IMG/VR virus record: IMGVR_UViG_3300028045_000001
Location: 62,001-126,000 of that record
Reading direction: 5' to 3' (one strand)
DNA: 64,000 nt
In this document: one piece after another, positions 135 to 46,026 of the stretch
Layout: the number at the start of each line of letters is the position of its first letter
Position numbering within the stretch: position 1 is the first letter of the stretch
Position numbers and translations under genes: made by a program
The notes under the pieces: model-generated
Told to the model about the DNA's origin: nothing
The model's database searches: none
The model's input: only the letters and a program-made list of their open reading frames with translations

Positions 135-145
135 TTATATATTAC
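135..145 (+). promoter_or_regulatory. Putative early (virion RNAP) promoter motif TTATATATTAC
   Basis: One of 8 exact intergenic + strand copies; resembles the phiKZ early promoter core TATATTAC; upstream of AAGGAG + ATG 195. Confidence 0.7.
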
Positions 146-863: not shown

Positions 864-1955
864 ATGAAAACAGACACTAACGCGTTCATAACAAAGTGGG
901 AAGGCGAACAGATCGAACTGCCGTTAGATCCAGATGGAACATATGACTTCACAGTAGATTGGGGAGATGGTACATCGAACCGCATAACCGAGCATGATCA
1001 AAAAGAAATTATACATGGTTATGAGGATGGCCAGGTAGCGCATGAAGTAGTTATATCGGGAGTTATAGAAGGGTTTGGGTATAGGGGTCTCCATATGCAC
1101 GATTACGAGTTAACTAAAGGCATATTACTCGATGTCCTACAGTGGGGAGATGTTAAGTTACATAATAGAGGGAGTCAGTTTGACCATTGCACAGAACTAA
1201 AAGGCTTCAGCGCTAAGGATGTTCCAGATTTATCTAATGTCACTAATATGGGTGGGATGTTCTATGGAGCTTCATCATTCAACCAAGACATCTCTAACTG
1301 GGACGTAAGTAATGTAACTGATATGATAGGCATGTTCGGTTACGCCACATCATTCAATCAAGACATCTCTAACTGGGATGTGAGTAGCGTAACTGACATG
1401 GGTGCGATGTTCTCTGACACTTTACGCTTCAACCAAGATATCTCCGATTGGGATGTTAGTAACGTTATTGGCATGCACAGTATGTTCCATAACGCTACCT
1501 CCTTCAACCAAAATTTATCTAATTGGGATGTGAGTAATGTGGGTGATATGGGATTTATGTTCTATGGAGCTACATCCTTCGATCAGGACATATCTAACTG
1601 GGATGTGAGTAAGGTTACTTATATGGGATTTATGTTCCATGGAGCTACCTCGTTCAACCAAGATATCTCTAAGTGGAATGTTGGCAATGTCACTAATGTA
1701 GACTGCATGTTTCTCAAAGCTTCATCCTTCAACCAATCCATCTCTAACTGGGATGTGAGTAATGTTACTAGTATGTCGGGTATGTTCGCTAAAGCTTCAT
1801 CCTTCAACCAAGATATCTCCAACTGGGATGTTGGAAATGTTACTAATATGGAGGGCATGTTCGGTGAGGCTTCATCCTTCAACCAAGACATCTCTAAATG
1901 GAACATCAGTGATGCTGCTGCTGACACATGTAATATATATGGCGATAAATCATAA
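864..1955 (+). CDS. BspA-like / DUF285 leucine-rich repeat protein with N-terminal PKD-like domain
   Basis: About 9 tandem 25-aa repeats of type FNQDISNWDVSNVTxMxxMFxxAxS; N-terminal FTVDWGDG motif; GGAGG RBS; no signal peptide evident. Confidence 0.9.
   Translation: MKTDTNAFITKWEGEQIELPLDPDGTYDFTVDWGDGTSNRITEHDQKEIIHGYEDGQVAHEVVISGVIEGFGYRGLHMHDYELTKGILLDVLQWGDVKLHNRGSQFDHCTELKGFSAKDVPDLSNVTNMGGMFYGASSFNQDISNWDVSNVTDMIGMFGYATSFNQDISNWDVSSVTDMGAMFSDTLRFNQDISDWDVSNVIGMHSMFHNATSFNQNLSNWDVSNVGDMGFMFYGATSFDQDISNWDVSKVTYMGFMFHGATSFNQDISKWNVGNVTNVDCMFLKASSFNQSISNWDVSNVTSMSGMFAKASSFNQDISNWDVGNVTNMEGMFGEASSFNQDISKWNISDAAADTCNIYGDKS
1265..1905 (+). repeat. 75-nt period tandem coding repeat (DUF285 units)
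   Basis: Recurrent TTCAACCAAGAxATCTCTAACTGGGAxGTxAGTAA units at 75-nt spacing; boundaries approximate. Confidence 0.85.
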
Positions 1956-2009: not shown

Positions 2010-2020
2010 TTATATATTAC
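2010..2020 (+). promoter_or_regulatory. Putative early promoter TTATATATTAC upstream of gyrB-like gene
   Basis: Exact motif copy, intergenic. Confidence 0.7.
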
Positions 2021-2133
2021 TTACATGAACCCAAAGGATAGAGGGTAGCACTCTTAATTTTTATGTAGTAATTACATTATATATGTATTGAGGTAATATT
2101 TAGTATTTTAAACGGCACGCATTGGAGAACAAA

Positions 2134-4563
2134 ATGGCAAATAATGAGATAGCAGATTACGGGATGGATGACATTGCGGACTACTCTGACAATAACTTAC
2201 TCGGGATAAGGGTATCGCCGACATCTGTTCTTGGAGAGCTTGGTCCAAAGGGACAGGTATTATGTGCCCGAGAAGTGATTGATAACAGTGTGGATGAGCA
2301 CGTGAAAGCAAAGGTCGCTGTCCCTATAAAAGTATGGATACACGAGTATCGTGGTGGGTATGAGATCAAAGTACTGGACTTTGGTAGGGGCATACCTCCT
2401 GAGGGACTTGAGATAGTAGCAACTAAATTATACACCTCTGCTAAGCAGGGTGGCACTGCTTACGGAGGTGCTACAGCCGGTACATTTGGTATAGGTCTTG
2501 TTGCATCGGCAGCCGCATCCAGATTGTTTTATTGTATTGCTATGAGAGAGGGGGAGTATGCCAAGATAGCGATTGAAGAAGGCAATACCAAAGAGTACAT
2601 CCATGATACGAAAATGGGATTTACACAAAGTGGCACTTACACCTTCATACAGTCGGATCCAAAAATATTTGAGGACTGTGATGAGTTTATTGGTGGTGAG
2701 GGCGAGAAAAGATTAATGGAGTTCTTACACTTCATTTCTGCAGTGTCTCCAAAACACCTACAAATAGAAGTTTATAAATCAAAAGGTAGGCGGACAACCA
2801 TAAAAGACTTACTTGCAGATACTTCAGATGTATTGCGCCAATTCGAAATACCTCCAAGAGCACAAATAATATTTAAAACCAACCCAGACGATACAATGAA
2901 GGAGTATGTCCAACAATATTATGGGATCAGGCCAGAGAATACACTTTTCGATATAACTGAATTGAAAAGGGAGCTTACAGATACTGGCGACATGGGATTC
3001 AATGTAAGTTTTGTAGTAGCCAATAATATGCGGGCCCCAGTACAAGTAATGTCGGCAGTCAACCGTGTATTCATGCGACTCCAAACCTCGGATCACATAA
3101 CTGTATTTTTAAGTACGATCAAAGAAATGGTACTACCCTATATAGACGATGAGGACATTGGAATATTCTTTAGGTCACAATATAGACTACCCATATACCC
3201 ATCAATACTTGTTAATTTAAGGGAGGTCAAATTTGTAGGAGCCTCAAAAGAAGGATTCAAAAGTAATAAATTTAGGGACCGTTACAGGAATGCATTGATA
3301 GAGTGTTTCAATACCCTTCCTGAAAAATGGGAAGAGCTGCATGAAGTATTAAAGGACGACATAGACACTAAGTATAAAGCATTCAGTAAAACAATAGTTC
3401 GCCACAAAGGTTTGAATAATGTATTTGAACATTTGAATAAGCCAAAGAACTATAAGGGTTGTCGAAGTAAAGACAGTCGAATTATAGAATTATTTCTTAC
3501 TGAAGGAAACTCTGCCGGTGATGCATTAAAGACATCACGGGATTCCACCACACAGGCACTGTATTATTTAATGGGGAAACCTGTAAATGCCCTGCAGAAA
3601 AGTAAATACGATGCCGATGAGATATATCAAGATCTTAAGCAGCTAATAGGTGTCGAATCGCATGACGCTACACTTGACAATATGTCGTTTAATAAGGTGC
3701 TCATACTGGCAGATGCCGATGCTGATGGACTGCACATCACAACGTTACTCATAAGTATTTTTTACAAGATCAATCCATTGATTATATCTGAGGGAAGGGT
3801 AGCTATCTGTAACCCGCCATTGTATTCGTTCTCGGTTGGCAACAAGACTTTATTTATGAGGGATGAAAACGCTAGACGCGACATGTTGATAAAGTTAGTG
3901 TATGCTCCGGCGCTGGATATTTTTATACAGACTGGGGATACGGTCATTAAGTTAGAAGGAGACAGCTACAGAGACCTATGCTACATGGTATTGAACGTCG
4001 GCACACGTATAGAGAATGCTGCTAAGATAGTGACTATGGACCCATCTTTGATGGAGCTATTCGCACCAGTAGTAGAGTTACTGAACCCAGATAAGATAGA
4101 CATAAAGGGACTCCAGGAGTATATTGAACTGCCTCTCAGTTATAACGAGATTGATAAAGCTATCATCATAGATATGCAGGATGGCTCCGAAAAAACAATA
4201 CCAATTAATAATTTATACGCTCAATTAAAGGAGGAAGTTTGTCCAGTATTGGATTCAATAAATGCAAAGTACTTTAATTTGTCTGTAACTACAAAGCAGA
4301 CCGATTACTACGAGGATCAACAGGTGACCTTTGTGTATCTACTCGGGCTATTTAAGTTGCTCGATAAGCAGGCAATTATATCTAGATTCAAAGGGATAGG
4401 GCAATTGAATCCCGATCAAATCGGACACACTTGTGTATCTCCAGCGACGCGATCCATAATAAATATATATGCTATAGGGGATGTGGAAAAGATAATGGCA
4501 TATCTTGGAGAAGACCCTTCTATTAGAAAATCAATAATAGAAAATGTTGATGCAATAATTTAG
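2134..4563 (+). CDS. gyrB: Type IIA topoisomerase subunit B (GyrB/ParE-like)
   Basis: GHKL motifs EVIDNSVDE, DFGRGIP, GTFGIG; TOPRIM EGNSAG, GKPVN, DADADG; C-terminal RFKGIG; ATG 2134 follows GGAGAA (ORF track starts at TTG 2122). Confidence 0.9.
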   Translation: MANNEIADYGMDDIADYSDNNLLGIRVSPTSVLGELGPKGQVLCAREVIDNSVDEHVKAKVAVPIKVWIHEYRGGYEIKVLDFGRGIPPEGLEIVATKLYTSAKQGGTAYGGATAGTFGIGLVASAAASRLFYCIAMREGEYAKIAIEEGNTKEYIHDTKMGFTQSGTYTFIQSDPKIFEDCDEFIGGEGEKRLMEFLHFISAVSPKHLQIEVYKSKGRRTTIKDLLADTSDVLRQFEIPPRAQIIFKTNPDDTMKEYVQQYYGIRPENTLFDITELKRELTDTGDMGFNVSFVVANNMRAPVQVMSAVNRVFMRLQTSDHITVFLSTIKEMVLPYIDDEDIGIFFRSQYRLPIYPSILVNLREVKFVGASKEGFKSNKFRDRYRNALIECFNTLPEKWEELHEVLKDDIDTKYKAFSKTIVRHKGLNNVFEHLNKPKNYKGCRSKDSRIIELFLTEGNSAGDALKTSRDSTTQALYYLMGKPVNALQKSKYDADEIYQDLKQLIGVESHDATLDNMSFNKVLILADADADGLHITTLLISIFYKINPLIISEGRVAICNPPLYSFSVGNKTLFMRDENARRDMLIKLVYAPALDIFIQTGDTVIKLEGDSYRDLCYMVLNVGTRIENAAKIVTMDPSLMELFAPVVELLNPDKIDIKGLQEYIELPLSYNEIDKAIIIDMQDGSEKTIPINNLYAQLKEEVCPVLDSINAKYFNLSVTTKQTDYYEDQQVTFVYLLGLFKLLDKQAIISRFKGIGQLNPDQIGHTCVSPATRSIINIYAIGDVEKIMAYLGEDPSIRKSIIENVDAII

Positions 4564-4602
4564 TTACGTTATCGGAATATAGGTTTCTCAATATTACAAT
4601 AG

Positions 4603-4613
4603 TTATATATTAC
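4603..4613 (+). promoter_or_regulatory. Putative early promoter TTATATATTAC
   Basis: Exact motif copy between gyrB stop and next ORF. Confidence 0.65.
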
Positions 4614-4662
4614 TATATAGATGTATCATGGCATACTTTTTAGAGAGAAAGGTGGTATAATT

Positions 4663-5052
4663 ATGGAACCAGAGTCGGCAGCGGAGTTAAGGAAGCGGGT
4701 CGCTATATTGGAGCGATCTACAGGACCTCAAATTATACAAAACATTGGACAGTGTCTCACCGGCAATACGTTGAAACAGTTGGCGGTATCTATTCTAGAA
4801 CGAAATAAAATAGGGGTGACTTACTTTAGATCAAAGTGCGATGAGTTATTTAGACAAGAAGGAATACGGAACAATAGAAGACGGAGTAGTCTAATATATA
4901 ACTATATAGATATGCTCAAAACTAAGCCAAACATCACTTGGCCAAAGTTCATACATTTGTTGATGTATTTGGATTTTAAATTACTGAAGGTTACAATCGA
5001 GATAGAAGTAGATGGAGAGGCGCAGACCCATGTAGTTGAGTCAGACGAATAG
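4663..5052 (+). CDS. Hypothetical basic protein between topoisomerase subunits
   Basis: ORF track 4621..5052; ATG 4663 preceded by AAAGGTGG; C-terminal ITWPKFIHLLMYL segment reminiscent of a phiKZ-like hypothetical family (recall only). Confidence 0.7.
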   Translation: MEPESAAELRKRVAILERSTGPQIIQNIGQCLTGNTLKQLAVSILERNKIGVTYFRSKCDELFRQEGIRNNRRRSSLIYNYIDMLKTKPNITWPKFIHLLMYLDFKLLKVTIEIEVDGEAQTHVVESDE

Positions 5053-5068
5053 TTATTAGGCGGATGCA

Positions 5069-5108
5069 TCAGACAGCGCCTTGATTCATCCATCAAGGCG
5101 CTGTCTGA
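5069..5108. terminator. 17-bp stem hairpin
   Basis: TCAGACAGCGCCTTGAT-tcatcc-ATCAAGGCGCTGTCTGA, 16 nt after the stop at 5052. Confidence 0.7.
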
Positions 5109-5209
5109 AGGCTATAGAAATTAAGAAGCATCGCCTTGTATCCCGGCAAGATGTCACTCTAAAATTAAAAAAAATAAATATTGTTTGATTCAAACTTGGA
5201 GACACTCGT

Positions 5210-7435
5210 ATGAAAAAAGAAGGACATGGATTTTTAGGACTAACTGACGATGCGACGTCATCTGACGTAATAGAACAATTCAGCATCGAGTATATGTTGT
5301 CCCTATTGCAACAGCGAGCCAGACATGGGATCGATGGCCTGTCAAAGGTTCTAAGAAGGATAATATATGTTGTTCACGCAGTCAATAAAAAGAAGAAAGT
5401 CTATAATCATACTGGCATGGTCATGGATTATCACCCATCAGGTGACAGTAGCATAAGTGACGCTATGACCAGCCTCATGCAGCCATGGGTAAATGCTATC
5501 CCATTGTTGGACAATCAAGGCGGTATAGGTAGCTACAGTGGAAGCAGGGCTGCTGCAAGTAGGTACCTAGAGGGCATGGTATCCCAATTCACAAGGGACG
5601 TATTCATAACCCCATCCTTTAATAAAACATTGACTATGATACCGGTATCTGGAGAAAAGCTATATGAACCAGAATACTTTATACCGAAAATTCCAACTGC
5701 ATTTATAATGGGGTCTAATGTAACTGCAAAAGGATTTCGAACTAAATCGCCTCAGTATAATTTTAACGACGTGTGCGAATTAGTTAAATATTTATCAGAG
5801 CATATATTGGAAAAACAGACCGATCTAACGGATGAGCATCTTGATGAGATGGCTAAGTACCTTATCCCAGACCCACCGTCGCACGCCCATCTAAGGAATA
5901 GGCGGCAATTATTGGCAGGTATAAAGGAGCGAAGGTTTGATATCCCATTGGCATTCGATGGGCATTTGGACATAAGTAGGTCCTCTGTGATCGTCAAGAG
6001 CATACCGCCTGGATACTCCTTCGTTAAAAATGTCGATGACAAACTCAAAGACCTTATCAGAGATAAGAAATCCTGGCTATGGCCGATACAAGAAAACTAC
6101 AATGATGAGACCGATCAGAGGTCCTCTGTTATGTGGGCAAAAGCCCGGATAGAATTAAAGAGATCGGCGGATGTGTTTGAGCATTTGCATTCATTCAAAT
6201 CAGCCGTAGGGTTCTCTCAAAATAATGTTTATAATTATAAATGGCTATATAGAGGACAACTTAGGGTTCTTAATCCAATAGAAATGCTAACGCTCTGGGC
6301 TAAAGAACGAATGAGCAACATTGGCTCGGAGTACACTCATTCAATAAAAACAAAGATTGAGGAGAACAGACGGTTAAAGGCACTGATAAAAATACAAGGC
6401 CACACCAAGGAAGTTATTAGAATCATTGAGGATAGCGAGGACACAGTTGACGCAAACAAAGCGCTAGCTAATAAATTCGAGATATCTGTGTATCAGGCGT
6501 CCGCTATAACTGCGATGCGAACTGGGCAACTAACCAAACGAAGTAAGGCAGTGCTCATGGAAGATGAGAAACAATCCGTGCGCTCTATAAAAGAACTAAA
6601 TAATGCATTCAAACAAATACCAGAACGGATGTTCCAGGAAGCGGACCAATTGCAAAATAAGTATAGTGGGAGAGCGGGCAGAAGGACCAGTTTTTCTAAT
6701 TTCAGTATGTATGTACAAATATTCAATAGAACGAGTACAGGATTCATCCAGTTGTACAGCATGGATGAATTAAAAAAGAAGTTTGTTGATTTCAAGGGAG
6801 TGCCTATGAATATAGGTAGTTTTTCAAAAGGTCGAGATTATAAGTACATTCTGGTAGACGGATCAGTTATAACTGAAGTTAAAAAAGACTTGCCGAAAGA
6901 ATCAACTGGCGTGCTGGTAACCAGTCCCAATAAACTTATGTATACGGTTAAGCTGAGTGATGGTACTATATGTTATTTAAATAAACTATATGCTATTGAA
7001 AATGGAACGTTGGTTTCTGACAAAGTATTATTGGTAACCAGAAAGGGAACCCTAACTGAGACAGCCACTACTTCGCTCCCTCTTAGGAAAAGTGCAAAAG
7101 CAGTCGGCAATATGACCGATGTCAAGCATGTTGCCAATGTCCCAGGAAAACAATATTATGTCGTTTATGTTGACCCAAAAGAAAAGAATGTAATACGGGC
7201 CACTATGGTGACGACACCACAGGGCAGTATAAAGCAAGTTTCAGTACGAACAAAAATACTGGCTGTGAATAAAATGACTCAACCATTGATGGTGACACTG
7301 CCATCAGACGTGATAAATAGACTCAGTACAAACCACATCTATATAAGTGACATGCGCCCAAGATTTGATAAGTCTGCCCACATCGTAATCGATGTTAAAA
7401 AATTAAAGAAGAAAAGATCACTATTGATTGGTTAG
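5210..7435 (+). CDS. gyrA: Type IIA topoisomerase subunit A (GyrA/ParC-like)
   Basis: DGLSKVLRRI (canonical DGLKPVxRR), YHPSGDSSI (YHPHGDxxI), catalytic AAASRYLE (AAAMRYTE), coiled-coil QAxAI..MR, ~240-aa beta-rich C-terminal region. Confidence 0.88.
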   Translation: MKKEGHGFLGLTDDATSSDVIEQFSIEYMLSLLQQRARHGIDGLSKVLRRIIYVVHAVNKKKKVYNHTGMVMDYHPSGDSSISDAMTSLMQPWVNAIPLLDNQGGIGSYSGSRAAASRYLEGMVSQFTRDVFITPSFNKTLTMIPVSGEKLYEPEYFIPKIPTAFIMGSNVTAKGFRTKSPQYNFNDVCELVKYLSEHILEKQTDLTDEHLDEMAKYLIPDPPSHAHLRNRRQLLAGIKERRFDIPLAFDGHLDISRSSVIVKSIPPGYSFVKNVDDKLKDLIRDKKSWLWPIQENYNDETDQRSSVMWAKARIELKRSADVFEHLHSFKSAVGFSQNNVYNYKWLYRGQLRVLNPIEMLTLWAKERMSNIGSEYTHSIKTKIEENRRLKALIKIQGHTKEVIRIIEDSEDTVDANKALANKFEISVYQASAITAMRTGQLTKRSKAVLMEDEKQSVRSIKELNNAFKQIPERMFQEADQLQNKYSGRAGRRTSFSNFSMYVQIFNRTSTGFIQLYSMDELKKKFVDFKGVPMNIGSFSKGRDYKYILVDGSVITEVKKDLPKESTGVLVTSPNKLMYTVKLSDGTICYLNKLYAIENGTLVSDKVLLVTRKGTLTETATTSLPLRKSAKAVGNMTDVKHVANVPGKQYYVVYVDPKEKNVIRATMVTTPQGSIKQVSVRTKILAVNKMTQPLMVTLPSDVINRLSTNHIYISDMRPRFDKSAHIVIDVKKLKKKRSLLIG

Positions 7436-9141: not shown

Positions 9142-9152
9142 TTATATATTAC
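9142..9152 (+). promoter_or_regulatory. Putative early promoter TTATATATTAC
   Basis: Exact motif copy upstream of AAGGAG + ATG 9211. Confidence 0.7.
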
Positions 9153-12128: not shown

Positions 12129-12138
12129 GGTGAACCAC

Positions 12139-14025
12139 ATGATAGGCACGCATAACGCATACAATCAAGCGCAACAAATTACTACAATACAGGCTATACA
12201 TGGGGATGAGCGGGTAACGCTTCCAAATGGCAGTATTATTACAATCCCATACGGGTATGAGTTGTTACTTTCAAATGAAAGGCCCATTTTAAATACTGCT
12301 GGCAATCCAACCATACAGCCGATCAGTACTAATAATTTTCATACCAACACGTCCAACTGGCAGCCACGTAATGGAGGAATGGTGCACCGGCATAACCAAG
12401 ATGTTTATTATAGTGCCATGCAATCCTTATGTAATGCAATAAGAACGGATGGCGACATTAGTGAGGATGAGTACAAGTTCTTTTGTGAGAATATGAACGT
12501 TATCGCAAGGAAGTATCATATGTGGGTAGAGCAATTCCCACAAGCAGCCGAGAATCATCTCATACAAGCAAGGTTGAAGATAGTTGAAAATATATTGGCG
12601 CAGTATCGCGAACAACGAAATAGAAACGGACTTGGTTCAGGCATAACATTGGAGGATTTCGAAGTAGAGGTTTACGATCGAGATATGTATGTTATAGAAA
12701 GTAATGTATCCTTTGCGAGTCCGAAGTCAAGCAAACCTACTGTTCGTAGGCCAAGTAGTTTATCCGACGCCGGTTTGCTTGCGGCTCCGGAGTATACACG
12801 CAAGTCATTATTAAGTACCCCGGAATCACCTGAAGTCGACAACGTTTTTGGATATGGGAATGCATGTAAGGTAATAGAAAGGCAGGAATCGATTATTGAT
12901 GAGGCTGATGCGTTCAGGTATTACTCTGGAGACGAGCCGCTTGCGTTTGATAATCCGTTCAAGCCAAAAATAGAAGTGGAATTAGATCAAGGTAATATTA
13001 AACAAGAAGACGACTCACTTCATTTCAATCTAAGTTATAAATTAGTAGGGAGGAAGGATACAATGAACAGTATGGCAGATGCACTGAAAAAGGCCATGGA
13101 AGAGAAAGTAGAATCCCCTGAGATAGCCCCATTATCTTGGGACAAAGTGACAGGTGAGATGATCGAGCAGGATACAATCCGTTTCGAAAAACTCCGAGAA
13201 TCTAACGACATCTCTACATTCTTAGCGAAGAGTCACAGTCGTGTCCAATCAATAGAAAGTATTAATGAGTTAATTAAGGTACCTCCGTTTTATGATGCAC
13301 ATGGATTTGTAAACGAAGCATCCGGATACATCATTGAATGCACGTCCGAAAAAGTGAAGCGCTTACCCATCCCATATTCAGCGTTTCGTGATTTTAAGGA
13401 GTCCAACGAGGCATTTATGTCTGATGGGTTTCTTAAAGCATGGGATGCGTATATAGTTAATAGAGGCAATGAGCTCCTATATCATTTGACACTTGGTGAC
13501 ACGTTTCCTTCAGCGGAAAGCTCAGTGGATTTTGTAGATTTTGCTAAGGAACACAAGGATTGGCTAGTAAAACATAAAGCTAACGCGAGGTATTACGATA
13601 TACTAAGCCAAATTAGGGACATTCCGAATTTTGTTGTCACCGACCCAGAAGAAATAGTAATGTCAGACATTATGTGTCCATCTGGTGTGGCGTGGTCGTT
13701 TGGAGAGTTTATAAAACCCGATGGGGATAAGGAGAAGCAAGGAGAGACTATTCTTAGAGCCATATGTAAAAATAATATATTTGTAAAAGAACCATGCGTT
13801 TATATAAATACCAATTTGTTGTTTGAAGGTATGACGCAATACGGAGAGTTTTCTGTTACTCAAATACAAGATGAGTTATTTGATGTCATCAGTAACAGCA
13901 TGACAATGAAGTGTCCTCTGATACTTATAACCTTTCCAAGAAAGTCAGGATGTAAGCGGTATAAGGTAACTATCCCACTTAGTGCTACATTTCGCAATAA
14001 AATAAAATTTATTCCAGATGTATAG
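12139..14025 (+). CDS. Hypothetical protein (~628 aa) coupled to nvRNAP subunit gene
   Basis: ORF track 12130..14025; GAGGTG RBS overlapping upstream stop then ATG 12139. Confidence 0.8.
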   Translation: MIGTHNAYNQAQQITTIQAIHGDERVTLPNGSIITIPYGYELLLSNERPILNTAGNPTIQPISTNNFHTNTSNWQPRNGGMVHRHNQDVYYSAMQSLCNAIRTDGDISEDEYKFFCENMNVIARKYHMWVEQFPQAAENHLIQARLKIVENILAQYREQRNRNGLGSGITLEDFEVEVYDRDMYVIESNVSFASPKSSKPTVRRPSSLSDAGLLAAPEYTRKSLLSTPESPEVDNVFGYGNACKVIERQESIIDEADAFRYYSGDEPLAFDNPFKPKIEVELDQGNIKQEDDSLHFNLSYKLVGRKDTMNSMADALKKAMEEKVESPEIAPLSWDKVTGEMIEQDTIRFEKLRESNDISTFLAKSHSRVQSIESINELIKVPPFYDAHGFVNEASGYIIECTSEKVKRLPIPYSAFRDFKESNEAFMSDGFLKAWDAYIVNRGNELLYHLTLGDTFPSAESSVDFVDFAKEHKDWLVKHKANARYYDILSQIRDIPNFVVTDPEEIVMSDIMCPSGVAWSFGEFIKPDGDKEKQGETILRAICKNNIFVKEPCVYINTNLLFEGMTQYGEFSVTQIQDELFDVISNSMTMKCPLILITFPRKSGCKRYKVTIPLSATFRNKIKFIPDV

Positions 14026-41263: not shown

Positions 41264-41274
41264 TTATATATTAC
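41264..41274 (+). promoter_or_regulatory. Putative early promoter TTATATATTAC with no downstream CDS
   Basis: Exact motif copy followed by ~600 nt without an ORF of 60 aa or more. Confidence 0.65.
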
Positions 41275-44563: not shown

Positions 44564-44574
44564 TTATATATTAC
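44564..44574 (+). promoter_or_regulatory. Putative early promoter TTATATATTAC (tandem copy 1)
   Basis: Exact motif copy. Confidence 0.7.
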
Positions 44575-44634: not shown

Positions 44635-44645
44635 TTATATATTAC
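44635..44645 (+). promoter_or_regulatory. Putative early promoter TTATATATTAC (tandem copy 2)
   Basis: Exact motif copy 71 nt after copy 1. Confidence 0.7.
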
Positions 44646-46015: not shown

Positions 46016-46026
46016 TTATATATTAC
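46016..46026 (+). promoter_or_regulatory. Putative early promoter TTATATATTAC
   Basis: Exact motif copy upstream of AGGAG + ATG 46077. Confidence 0.7.

What the first reader, a model, noticed from the sequence alone, without database searches (positions are those of the whole stretch)
2134..7435. Bacterial-architecture gyrase-like type IIA topoisomerase in a phiKZ-like phage
Seen: ~810-aa B subunit with ATPase, TOPRIM and an extra ~170-aa segment before RFKGIG; 741-aa A subunit with catalytic SRY and ~240-aa C-terminal domain with a degenerate blade-like motif (LPLRKSAKAVGN), but no canonical QRRGGKG GyrA-box. Known: T4-type topo II lacks such a CTD; the TOPRIM insertion is typical of Gram-negative GyrB; phiKZ itself has no annotated type II topoisomerase as far as recalled. 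Inference: a divergent enzyme that may supercoil or decatenate DNA in a host-excluded compartment. The substituted quinolone-pocket helix (YHPSGDSSISDAM) may alter drug sensitivity.
Basis: partly seen in the sequence, partly recalled or inferred. Interest (0 to 1): 0.65.

Follow-up and report, generated by a model that had tools for sequence, protein, structure and literature searches.

The report
Phage-encoded gyrase-like type II topoisomerase
A marine jumbo phage distantly related to phiKZ carries two intact genes for a bacterial-style (GyrB/GyrA-like) DNA-untangling enzyme from a phage-only branch. The enzyme kind is already known in related giant phages, so this is a well-described new variant rather than a new kind of system.

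Summary
Window 2134-4563 encodes an 809-aa GyrB-like subunit and 5210-7435 a 741-aa GyrA-like subunit, with all catalytic residues intact.

- **B subunit:** structure prediction shows a full ATPase plus transducer, a TOPRIM domain, and a confidently folded ~150-170-aa insert. The insert sits at the same site, has about the same length, and superposes on the E. coli GyrB insert.
- **A subunit:** a bacterial-type cleavage core plus a very basic, all-beta C-terminal domain. That domain looks like a divergent GyrA/ParC pinwheel and lacks a GyrA-box in all 47 family members.
- **Family:** the pair belongs to a monophyletic phage-only clade (52 hits among 50%-identity cluster representatives). It shows conserved synteny in uncultured phiKZ-related jumbo phages, and it was absent from five cultured phiKZ-like phages.
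- **Known relatives:** comparable split two-subunit enzymes are already annotated in AR9/PBS1, phiR1-37 and Staphylococcus jumbo phages, and were noted in a 2021 comparative study.
- **Compartment:** chimallin and PhuZ were not detectable, so the "host-excluded compartment" idea is unsupported.
- **Likely role:** an early-expressed A2B2 enzyme that relaxes and decatenates phage DNA. Gyrase-type negative supercoiling is less likely.
- **Drug pocket:** the Ser83 and Asp87 equivalents are retained.

The parts
2010..2020 (+). TTATATATTAC motif (phiKZ-type early-promoter core) 114 nt upstream of the B gene
   Evidence: 8 copies in the window, all on the + strand, 0.23 expected. TATATTAC is listed as the phiKZ promoter core in PMC7058600. 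TATATTA[CT] lies 46-83 nt upstream of the B gene in 8 of 13 relatives. Function inferred, not shown.
2134..4563 (+). B subunit (GyrB-like), 809 aa, stop included
   Evidence: model m8183ee973357 with pLDDT 88.4.
2185..3408 (+). GHKL ATPase plus transducer (aa 18-425)
3421..3855 (+). TOPRIM domain (aa 430-574) with E457 and D527/D529/D531
   Evidence: Pfam Toprim E 2.4e-9; invariant residues in A7; EGNSA at 457 and DADADG at 527.
3856..4368 (+). Insert domain (about aa 575-745), acidic (pI 4.4)
4369..4560 (+). GyrB C-terminal tail with RFKGIG (aa 746-809)
   Evidence: Pfam DNA_gyraseB_C E 2.4e-7; aligns to E. coli GyrB 735-768.
4603..4613 (+). Second TTATATATTAC motif, upstream of ORF-Y
4663..5052 (+). 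ORF-Y: small basic protein (129 aa from the ATG behind AGGTGG; the ORF is listed from 4621), conserved between B and A in the whole clade
   Evidence: Sequence. jackhmmer unites the ORFs at this position from all 15 loci; alignment A10. No Pfam or PHROG family, only a weak HTH_26 hint in one homologue (E 0.061). Role unknown.
5069..5108 (+). 17-bp perfect hairpin between ORF-Y and the A gene
   Evidence: -33.9 kcal/mol, z -6.6, 0 of 200 shuffles fold as well. No T-run follows, so a terminator or processing role is only inferred.
5210..7435 (+). A subunit (GyrA/ParC-like), 741 aa, stop included
   Evidence: model m973158daa3f8 with pLDDT 88.6.
5210..6676 (+). Breakage-reunion core (aa 1-489) with R118-Y119
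6677..7432 (+). C-terminal domain (aa 490-741), all-beta, pI 10.0, no GyrA-box

Best explanation
Window 2134-4563 and 5210-7435 encode the B and A subunits of an active, ATP-dependent type IIA DNA topoisomerase (A2B2) of the bacterial gyrase/topo IV architecture.

It belongs to a phage-only clade carried by uncultured jumbo phages distantly related to phiKZ. This genome is a complete 240-kb marine phage.

Mechanism, inferred from homology:
- The B ATPase gate captures one DNA duplex.
- TOPRIM (E457, DxDxD) together with A-subunit Tyr119 cleaves a second duplex.
- The first duplex is passed through and leaves by the A-subunit C-gate.
- The GyrB-type insert probably buttresses DNA binding and couples ATPase to strand passage, as it does in E. 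coli gyrase.
- The basic pinwheel-like CTD binds DNA but lacks the GyrA-box needed for chiral wrapping.

The enzyme most likely relaxes supercoils and decatenates or unknots replicating, transcribed and packaged phage DNA (topo IV-like output) rather than introducing negative supercoils. It is probably an early gene product, because a phiKZ-type early-promoter motif sits upstream of B. It is the only topoisomerase recognised in the genome among the families searched.

What is shown: gene integrity, folds, catalytic residues, clade, synteny and distribution. What is inferred: activity, output (relaxation or decatenation versus supercoiling), timing of expression, and the role of the insert.
For: - Family assignment: Pfam and PHROGs; PDB sequence search best to bacterial GyrA (7e-27) and E. 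coli GyrB (6e-31), with T4/T6 subunits far weaker (1e-11, 2.6e-10).
- Catalytic residues invariant across phage and bacterial rows: B E47, N51, D82, G-loop, K372, E457, D527/529/531; A R118-Y119.
- Insert: same site and length as the bacterial one.
- CTD: pinwheel-like, strongly basic, and no GyrA-box in 47 of 47 members; 9 of 15 bacterial GyrA-like controls and E. coli GyrA have the box, while 0 of 12 ParC-like do.
- Clade: SH-aLRT 100. The CTD alone finds 52 hits, most at the C-terminus of ~730-785-aa proteins and about ten in shorter, probably partial sequences.
- Conserved synteny divDNApol...B-X-Y-A-RNAP beta.
- Promoter motif; AR9's B gene has an annotated early promoter.
- No type IA topoisomerase (PF01131) in the genome.
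- The same DNA was found unchanged in contigs of four seawater runs.
Against: - No biochemical data exist for this or any related phage enzyme that I could find.
- The B subunit carries the insert typical of gyrase, not of ParE, so the 'topo IV-like output' call rests mainly on the missing GyrA-box.
- Promoter function is inferred from a motif only.
- Type IB topoisomerases were not searched for.
Confidence: 0.6

Rival explanations
1. It is a true phage gyrase. The basic CTD, perhaps with its lysine-rich C-terminal tail and the GyrB-type insert, wraps DNA and the enzyme introduces negative supercoils without a canonical GyrA-box.
For: The B subunit has the insert found in GyrB of Gram-negative bacteria and not in ParE, and full-length E. 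coli GyrB is the best Foldseek match. The CTD is very basic (pI 10.0, 41 K+R against 19 D+E). The A-core tree does not place the clade inside the ParC clade.
Against: No strict or loose GyrA-box in 47 of 47 family members. From established knowledge of gyrase, the GyrA-box is required for supercoiling. The best domain-only structural match of the CTD is ParC, not GyrA. The CTD is ~250 aa, which is ParC-sized, against ~310-350 aa in GyrA.
Confidence: 0.25
2. The enzyme's main role is host takeover or counter-defence, not phage DNA topology. For example, it could replace host gyrase or topo IV that the phage or the host's toxins inactivate, or act on the host nucleoid.
For: Early-promoter-like motif. 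Sporadic distribution among phiKZ-related phages suggests an accessory rather than a core function.
Against: There is no direct evidence. The conserved position next to DNA polymerase and RNAP genes fits a DNA-metabolism module. All catalytic residues are kept, as expected for a working topoisomerase either way.
Confidence: 0.1
3. The genes are decaying or non-catalytic relics, or a mis-assembled bacterial fragment in a viral contig.
For: Three domains escape Pfam (transducer, insert, CTD).
Against: Both frames are open, models are confident, and catalytic residues are invariant in 46-47 homologues. The genes sit among phiKZ-type genes in a complete contig with direct terminal repeats. The same synteny is found on more than 15 other phage contigs, and the clade is separate from bacterial sequences.
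Confidence: 0.03

Closest known systems
E. coli DNA gyrase (GyrB with ~170-aa TOPRIM insert, PDB 3NUH/4TMA/6RKW; GyrA)
   Different: 17-24% identity. The Pfam insert, transducer and CTD models do not fire. The CTD is ~250 aa instead of ~350, has no QRRGGKG GyrA-box, and has a basic instead of an acidic tail. B has Asn at the Asp426 position.
Bacterial topoisomerase IV (ParE/ParC)
   Same: The A subunit is ~740-750 aa with a GyrA-box-less CTD. E. coli ParC CTD (4mn4_A) is the only beta-domain-only entry among the top 50 structural matches, and full ParC 1zvu aligns over 538 residues.
   Different: ParE has no insert, whereas this B subunit has one. The tree does not nest the clade within the ParC clade.
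Two-subunit topoisomerases of RNAP-encoding jumbo phages: Bacillus AR9/PBS1/Goe21, Yersinia phiR1-37, Staphylococcus DC4/S6; 'two-subunit phage-specific topoisomerase' of Iyer et al. 2021 (PMC7824862)
   Same: A phage-encoded B plus A pair in phiKZ-related genomes. AR9 gp024 and phiR1-37 g314 also carry an extra ~140 aa at the insert site: DxDxDG-to-RxKGxG spacing is 209 and 216, against 224 here and 70-74 in insert-less proteins. phiR1-37 g329 aligns over 783 columns in BFVD, so it also has a CTD. AR9's B gene is annotated as early.
   Different: Only ~25% identity. They are not resolved as sisters in the tree. Their genes are interrupted by homing endonucleases or inteins, whereas here both genes are intact. 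The B-X-Y-A synteny with ORF-Y is specific to this clade.
T4/T6 topoisomerase II (gp39, gp60, gp52; PDB 8YLU, 8YO3, 8YON)
   Different: The T4-type A subunit stops after the core (~442-452 aa, no CTD) and its B subunit has no insert: only 195 residues of 8yo3_C align, against 335 for E. coli. Sequence E-values are 15-20 orders of magnitude weaker than to bacterial gyrase.

Membership tests
Type IIA topoisomerase, B subunit (GyrB/ParE type) | GHKL ATPase with catalytic Glu, Mg-binding Asn, adenine-binding Asp and a Gly-rich ATP lid | tested here: met
Type IIA topoisomerase, B subunit (GyrB/ParE type) | Transducer domain with QTK-loop lysine | tested here: met
   Residues 18-425 superpose on the GyrB 43K fragment at rmsd 2.6 A. 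Q370 is nearly invariant and K372 invariant. Pfam PF00204 is silent.
Type IIA topoisomerase, B subunit (GyrB/ParE type) | TOPRIM with catalytic Glu and DxDxD, followed by the C-terminal tail (PF00986) | tested here: met
   Pfam Toprim and DNA_gyraseB_C; E457 and D527/D529/D531 invariant.
Type IIA topoisomerase, A subunit (GyrA/ParC type) | Winged-helix domain with catalytic Arg-Tyr, tower and coiled-coil C-gate | tested here: met
DNA gyrase in the strict sense | GyrA-box (QRRGGKG-like) on the first CTD blade | tested here: not met
   Absent under strict and loose patterns in 47 of 47 family members. Present in E. coli GyrA and 9 of 15 bacterial GyrA-like controls.
DNA gyrase in the strict sense | Six-bladed beta-pinwheel CTD that wraps DNA | tested here: inconclusive
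   All-beta with about 20 strands and pinwheel-like by Foldseek, VIA and Atlas. Only ~250 aa long. The blade number was not determined because no CTD-only model could be made.
DNA gyrase in the strict sense | ATP-dependent negative supercoiling | not testable with these tools
   Needs the purified enzyme.
GyrB of Gram-negative type (insert-bearing) | ~170-aa domain inserted in TOPRIM between PPLY and RYKGLG | tested here: met
   Spacing 190 aa, against 192-211 in most bacterial insert-bearing proteins (one at 285) and 36-40 in most insert-less ones. 4tma_B aligns over 335 of 374 residues. Sequence homology is weak (hhalign E 1.3e-3; PF18053 not hit).
Topoisomerase IV | ParE without insert; ParC CTD without GyrA-box | tested here: inconclusive
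   The CTD criterion is met. The ParE criterion is not met because an insert is present. The tree does not place the clade in ParC.
T4-type phage topoisomerase II | A subunit without CTD; B subunit without insert | tested here: not met
   A has a 250-aa CTD and B has an insert.
Chimalliviridae (nucleus-forming phiKZ-like phages) | Chimallin (ChmA) shell protein | tested here: not met
   phrog_4795 finds 5 of 5 cultured phiKZ-like phages (E 3e-33 to 3e-240) but nothing in this complete genome at E up to 10. A custom 5-sequence HMM run with --max also finds nothing. A very divergent chimallin cannot be excluded.
Chimalliviridae (nucleus-forming phiKZ-like phages) | Split multisubunit RNAP and phiKZ-type virion genes | tested here: met
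   phrog_3233 RNAP beta subunit 2.9e-49, plus sheath, capsid, terminase and virion-protein PHROGs. The sheath hits listed are phiKZ-like jumbo phages at ~24% identity; 25 of 217 records were shown.

The most novel reading that the evidence does not exclude
This clade's enzyme is a self-sufficient phage gyrase that negatively supercoils DNA without a GyrA-box, using its basic CTD and the GyrB-type insert. The universally co-located small protein ORF-Y would be a dedicated accessory or regulatory factor. The enzyme would then free a chimallin-less (or highly divergent-shell) branch of phiKZ-related phages from any dependence on host topoisomerases.
Probability: 0.08. Interest if true: 0.7.

Novelty: new variant of a known kind. 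Interest (0 to 1): 0.35.

Why it matters
How giant phages manage the topology of 200-300-kb genomes is poorly understood. In the studied nucleus-forming phages, host topoisomerase I is imported into the phage nucleus, and most chimallin-encoding phages have no annotated topoisomerase.

This clade shows that one uncultured branch of phiKZ-related phages instead carries its own complete bacterial-style type IIA enzyme. The enzyme combines a GyrB-type insert with a GyrA-box-less CTD, a mix that neither canonical gyrase nor topo IV shows.

It is a tractable target, with two soluble-looking subunits. It could be used to ask what the GyrB insert and a minimal CTD contribute to supercoiling versus decatenation. 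The gain is incremental, because the enzyme class and its presence in related jumbo phages are already known.

Tried and rejected
- Megablast of the locus against 50,697 phage records found nothing.
- Pfam at E up to 10 on the CTD, the insert and the transducer alone gave only noise.
- hhalign of the CTD profile against the bacterial CTD profile found only one blade-like stretch (Prob 3.9%), which is not significant.
- hhalign self-comparison to count blades returned nothing, even for the bacterial positive control, so it is uninformative.
- VIA 'pdb_via' lists were filled by the large domains and could not test the CTD or the insert. The wide search did.
- Chimallin was sought with phiKZ gp54, phrog_4795 and a custom HMM, with no hit.
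- The 631-aa ORF at 12130-14025 was considered as a chimallin candidate. It has no Pfam, PHROG, PDB or Atlas support, and the Atlas model is poor.
- ORF-X of the relatives has no counterpart in this genome.
- Laying contigs of four seawater runs showed no single-letter substitutions. One 1-base deletion appeared at 2661 in a single low-depth X3 contig and may be an error. No selection test was possible.
- I considered testing ORF-Y binding with complex prediction but did not run it. I do not claim binding, and the alignment hints at a helix-turn-helix protein instead.
- The third word-based protein search and the 'atlas' fold search were left unused as not decisive.

Full report
**1. What is there**

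The window is bases 62001-126000 of a 239,960-bp IMG/VR virus record with direct terminal repeats, estimated complete. On the + strand lie three relevant ORFs:
- An ORF listed from TTG 2122 to 4563.
- A small ORF at 4621-5052.
- An ORF at 5210-7435.

For the first ORF, ATG 2134 follows a GGAGA ribosome-binding site. The public protein cluster for this genome also starts there (P0124, 809 aa).

No GyrA-box is present.

**2. B subunit**

Pfam detects HATPase_c, Toprim and DNA_gyraseB_C, but not the transducer (PF00204) or the insert (PF18053). The best PDB sequence match is full-length E. coli GyrB (6e-31). In that alignment, query 438-592 pairs with E. coli 401-559, and query 751-784 pairs with 734-767. 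The unaligned middle therefore lies exactly where the E. coli insert lies.

I built a 46-row alignment of 15 phage-clade and 31 bacterial B subunits (A7). The following are invariant: E47, N51, D82, the Gly-rich lid, K372 of the QTK loop, E457 and D527/D529/D531.

The AlphaFold model has mean pLDDT 88.4, and the insert reaches 94-97.
- Insert-less halves align over only 184-225 residues, and the T4 equivalent over 195.
- The seven best Foldseek matches are all full-length E. coli GyrB.

The PPLY-to-RxKGxG spacing compares as follows:

| Group | Spacing (aa) |
|---|---|
| Phage clade | 188-206 |
| Insert-bearing bacterial GyrB | 192-211 (one outlier at 285) |
| Insert-less GyrB | 36-40 in most, 67-79 in a few |

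Profile-profile comparison of the two insert alignments gives a collinear 94-column match, but only at E 1.3e-3 and Prob 18.6%.

I conclude that the extra segment is a GyrB-type insert domain at the canonical site, strongly diverged in sequence. It is acidic, with pI 4.4.

**3. A subunit**

Pfam sees only DNA_topoisoIV, over aa 41-469. PDB sequence matches are best to bacterial GyrA (7e-27), against 1e-11 for T4/T6 gp52.

Residues 490-741 form a confident all-beta domain of about 20 strands. Four lines of evidence tie it to the GyrA/ParC pinwheel:
- Foldseek ranks full-length GyrA/ParC entries (827-863 aligned columns, E 3e-34 to 8e-29) above core-only entries (about 3e-27).
- In the ESM Atlas, all 30 named feature neighbours of residues 490-741 carry PF03989. 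The Atlas's own model matches a PF03989 cluster at TM 0.46/0.50.

Blade number and the fold of residues 490-575 therefore stay open.

The CTD is strongly basic (pI 10.0; 41 K+R against 19 D+E), as expected for a DNA-binding surface. No member of the family has a GyrA-box. The same pattern finds E. coli GyrA and 9 of 15 bacterial GyrA-like controls, and none of 12 ParC-like controls.

**4. Family, distribution and context**

*Family size.* Word-based searches found only three to four full-length relatives of each subunit, at 25-44% identity. An exhaustive HMMER search with the CTD alone found 52 hits among the 50%-identity cluster representatives. Most hits lie at the C-terminus of ~730-785-aa proteins; about ten are in shorter, probably partial, sequences. 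IMG/VR holds 13 close loci on contigs of 40-361 kb.

*Synteny.* The order is conserved: divergent DNA polymerase, then B, then ORF-X (220-330 aa), then ORF-Y (121-190 aa), then A, then an RNAP beta-like gene. The window lacks ORF-X anywhere in its genome but keeps ORF-Y. All 15 ORFs at the ORF-Y position form one family.

*Tree.* A tree of 74 A-subunit cores gives the clade SH-aLRT 100 on a stem of 1.09 changes per site. The clade lies outside the bacterial GyrA and ParC clades, and the backbone is unresolved. That run used the quick IQ-TREE search, so stars on long branches deserve caution.

*Genome type.* The surrounding genes are phiKZ-type:
- An RNAP beta subunit (phrog_3233, 2.9e-49).
- Sheath, capsid, terminase and virion proteins.
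- The sheath matches 217 phage records at about 24% identity; the 25 shown are phiKZ-like jumbo phages.

*Cultured relatives.* PF00521 is absent from phiKZ and four diverse cultured relatives, with 12 of the 14 control genomes ringing.

*Chimallin.* The chimallin profile that detects all five of those cultured phages finds nothing in this genome. phiKZ gp54, a custom HMM and a tubulin profile also find nothing. 'phiKZ-related' is therefore supported, but 'nucleus-forming' is not.

*Habitat.* The same DNA occurs in contigs of four seawater runs with no substitutions; one 1-base deletion in a single low-depth contig may be an error.

**5. What was already known**

- Iyer et al. [quoted passage not shown]
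- A 2025 survey notes that topoisomerases are annotated in individual chimallin phages only (PMC12625630).
- Annotated B plus A pairs exist in AR9/PBS1/Goe21, phiR1-37 and Staphylococcus DC4-like phages. They are often interrupted by homing endonucleases or an intein.
- AR9 gp024 and phiR1-37 g314 also carry an extra ~140 aa at the insert site.
- phiR1-37 g329 aligns over 783 columns in BFVD, so it too has a CTD.

The architecture is therefore not unique to this phage. I found no biochemical study of any of these enzymes in the searched library.

**6. Expression signals**

The 11-mer TTATATATTAC contains the published phiKZ promoter core TATATTAC (PMC7058600). It occurs 8 times in the window, all on the + strand, against 0.23 expected. 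Two copies lie directly upstream of B (2010-2020) and of ORF-Y (4603-4613).

Genome-wide, the 8-mer is 39 (+) against 11 (-). In 8 of 13 relatives, TATATTA[CT] lies 46-83 nt upstream of the B gene. This suggests early transcription by the virion RNAP, but that is inference.

A 17-bp hairpin (5069-5108, -33.9 kcal/mol, z -6.6) separates ORF-Y from A.

**7. Drug pocket**

By alignment to E. coli GyrA 77-87 (numbering from established knowledge), the window has S80 and D84 at the Ser83 and Asp87 positions. It has Ser at the His80, Ala84 and Tyr86 positions. Across the family the Ser83 position is highly variable, while Asp87 is mostly Asp or Glu.

B has Asn459 at the position of E. coli GyrB Asp426 and keeps the Lys447 equivalent (K482). 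The novobiocin-contact Arg136 and Thr165 equivalents (R138, T168) are conserved.

The sequence gives no strong reason to predict unusual drug behaviour. An assay would decide.

**8. Verdict**

It belongs to a sizeable phage-only clade and combines a GyrB-type insert with a GyrA-box-less, ParC-sized CTD.

My estimates are:
- About 0.9 that it is an active type IIA topoisomerase.
- About 0.55-0.6 that its output is relaxation and decatenation.
- About 0.25 that it supercoils.

It is a new variant of a known kind, and interest is moderate.

Noticed in passing
window 135-145, 2010-2020, 4603-4613, 9142-9152, 41264-41274, 44564-44574, 44635-44645, 46016-46026: TTATATATTAC occurs 8 times, all on the + strand, against 0.23 expected. 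It contains the published phiKZ early-promoter core. Genome-wide the 8-mer is 39 (+) against 11 (-). This is probably the early-promoter set of this phage.
   Followed up: partly
window 4663-5052 (ORF listed from 4621): ORF-Y is a small basic protein conserved after the B gene in all 15 clade loci, even where A is not adjacent. It belongs to no known family and shows only a weak HTH hint (E 0.061) in one homologue. It could be a regulator or an accessory factor.
   Followed up: partly
relatives L011, L014, L003, L009, L021, L018, L015, L019 (between B and ORF-Y): ORF-X (220-330 aa, no family) is present in the relatives but has no counterpart anywhere in the window's genome. By BLASTP the ORF-X proteins fall into several groups that are barely alike.
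   Followed up: partly
window 5069-5108: A perfect 17-bp hairpin (-33.9 kcal/mol, z -6.6) lies between ORF-Y and the A gene, with no T-run after it.
   Followed up: partly
L002 6026-8835: In one relative on a 363-kb contig, the B gene is split at the DADxDG motif into 533-aa and 261-aa ORFs with ~420 bp between them. About 20 residues are missing from both, which suggests an intron or another insertion.
   Followed up: no
L091 4498-8286; L099 1095-4583; L093 3505-7211: In phiR1-37 both topoisomerase genes are interrupted by endonuclease genes (g311/g313/g314 and g327/g328/g329). In AR9-like Goe21, gyrA is split at the same early position, after ~70 aa.
   Followed up: partly
window 864-1955 and 1958-1991: A 363-aa protein made of DUF285 (BspA-type leucine-rich) repeats (Pfam 5e-108) is followed by a 14-bp terminator-like hairpin and a T-run just before the topoisomerase module.
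   Followed up: no
window 12130-14025: A 631-aa ORF has no Pfam, PHROG, PDB or Atlas relative, and its Atlas model is poor. I considered it as a divergent chimallin candidate because of its size and position, but nothing supports that.
   Followed up: partly
whole genome G000: No chimallin, tubulin (PhuZ) or type IA topoisomerase was detectable in a complete phiKZ-related genome. This marine clade may lack the phage nucleus, or may have a shell protein beyond the reach of sequence searches.
   Followed up: partly
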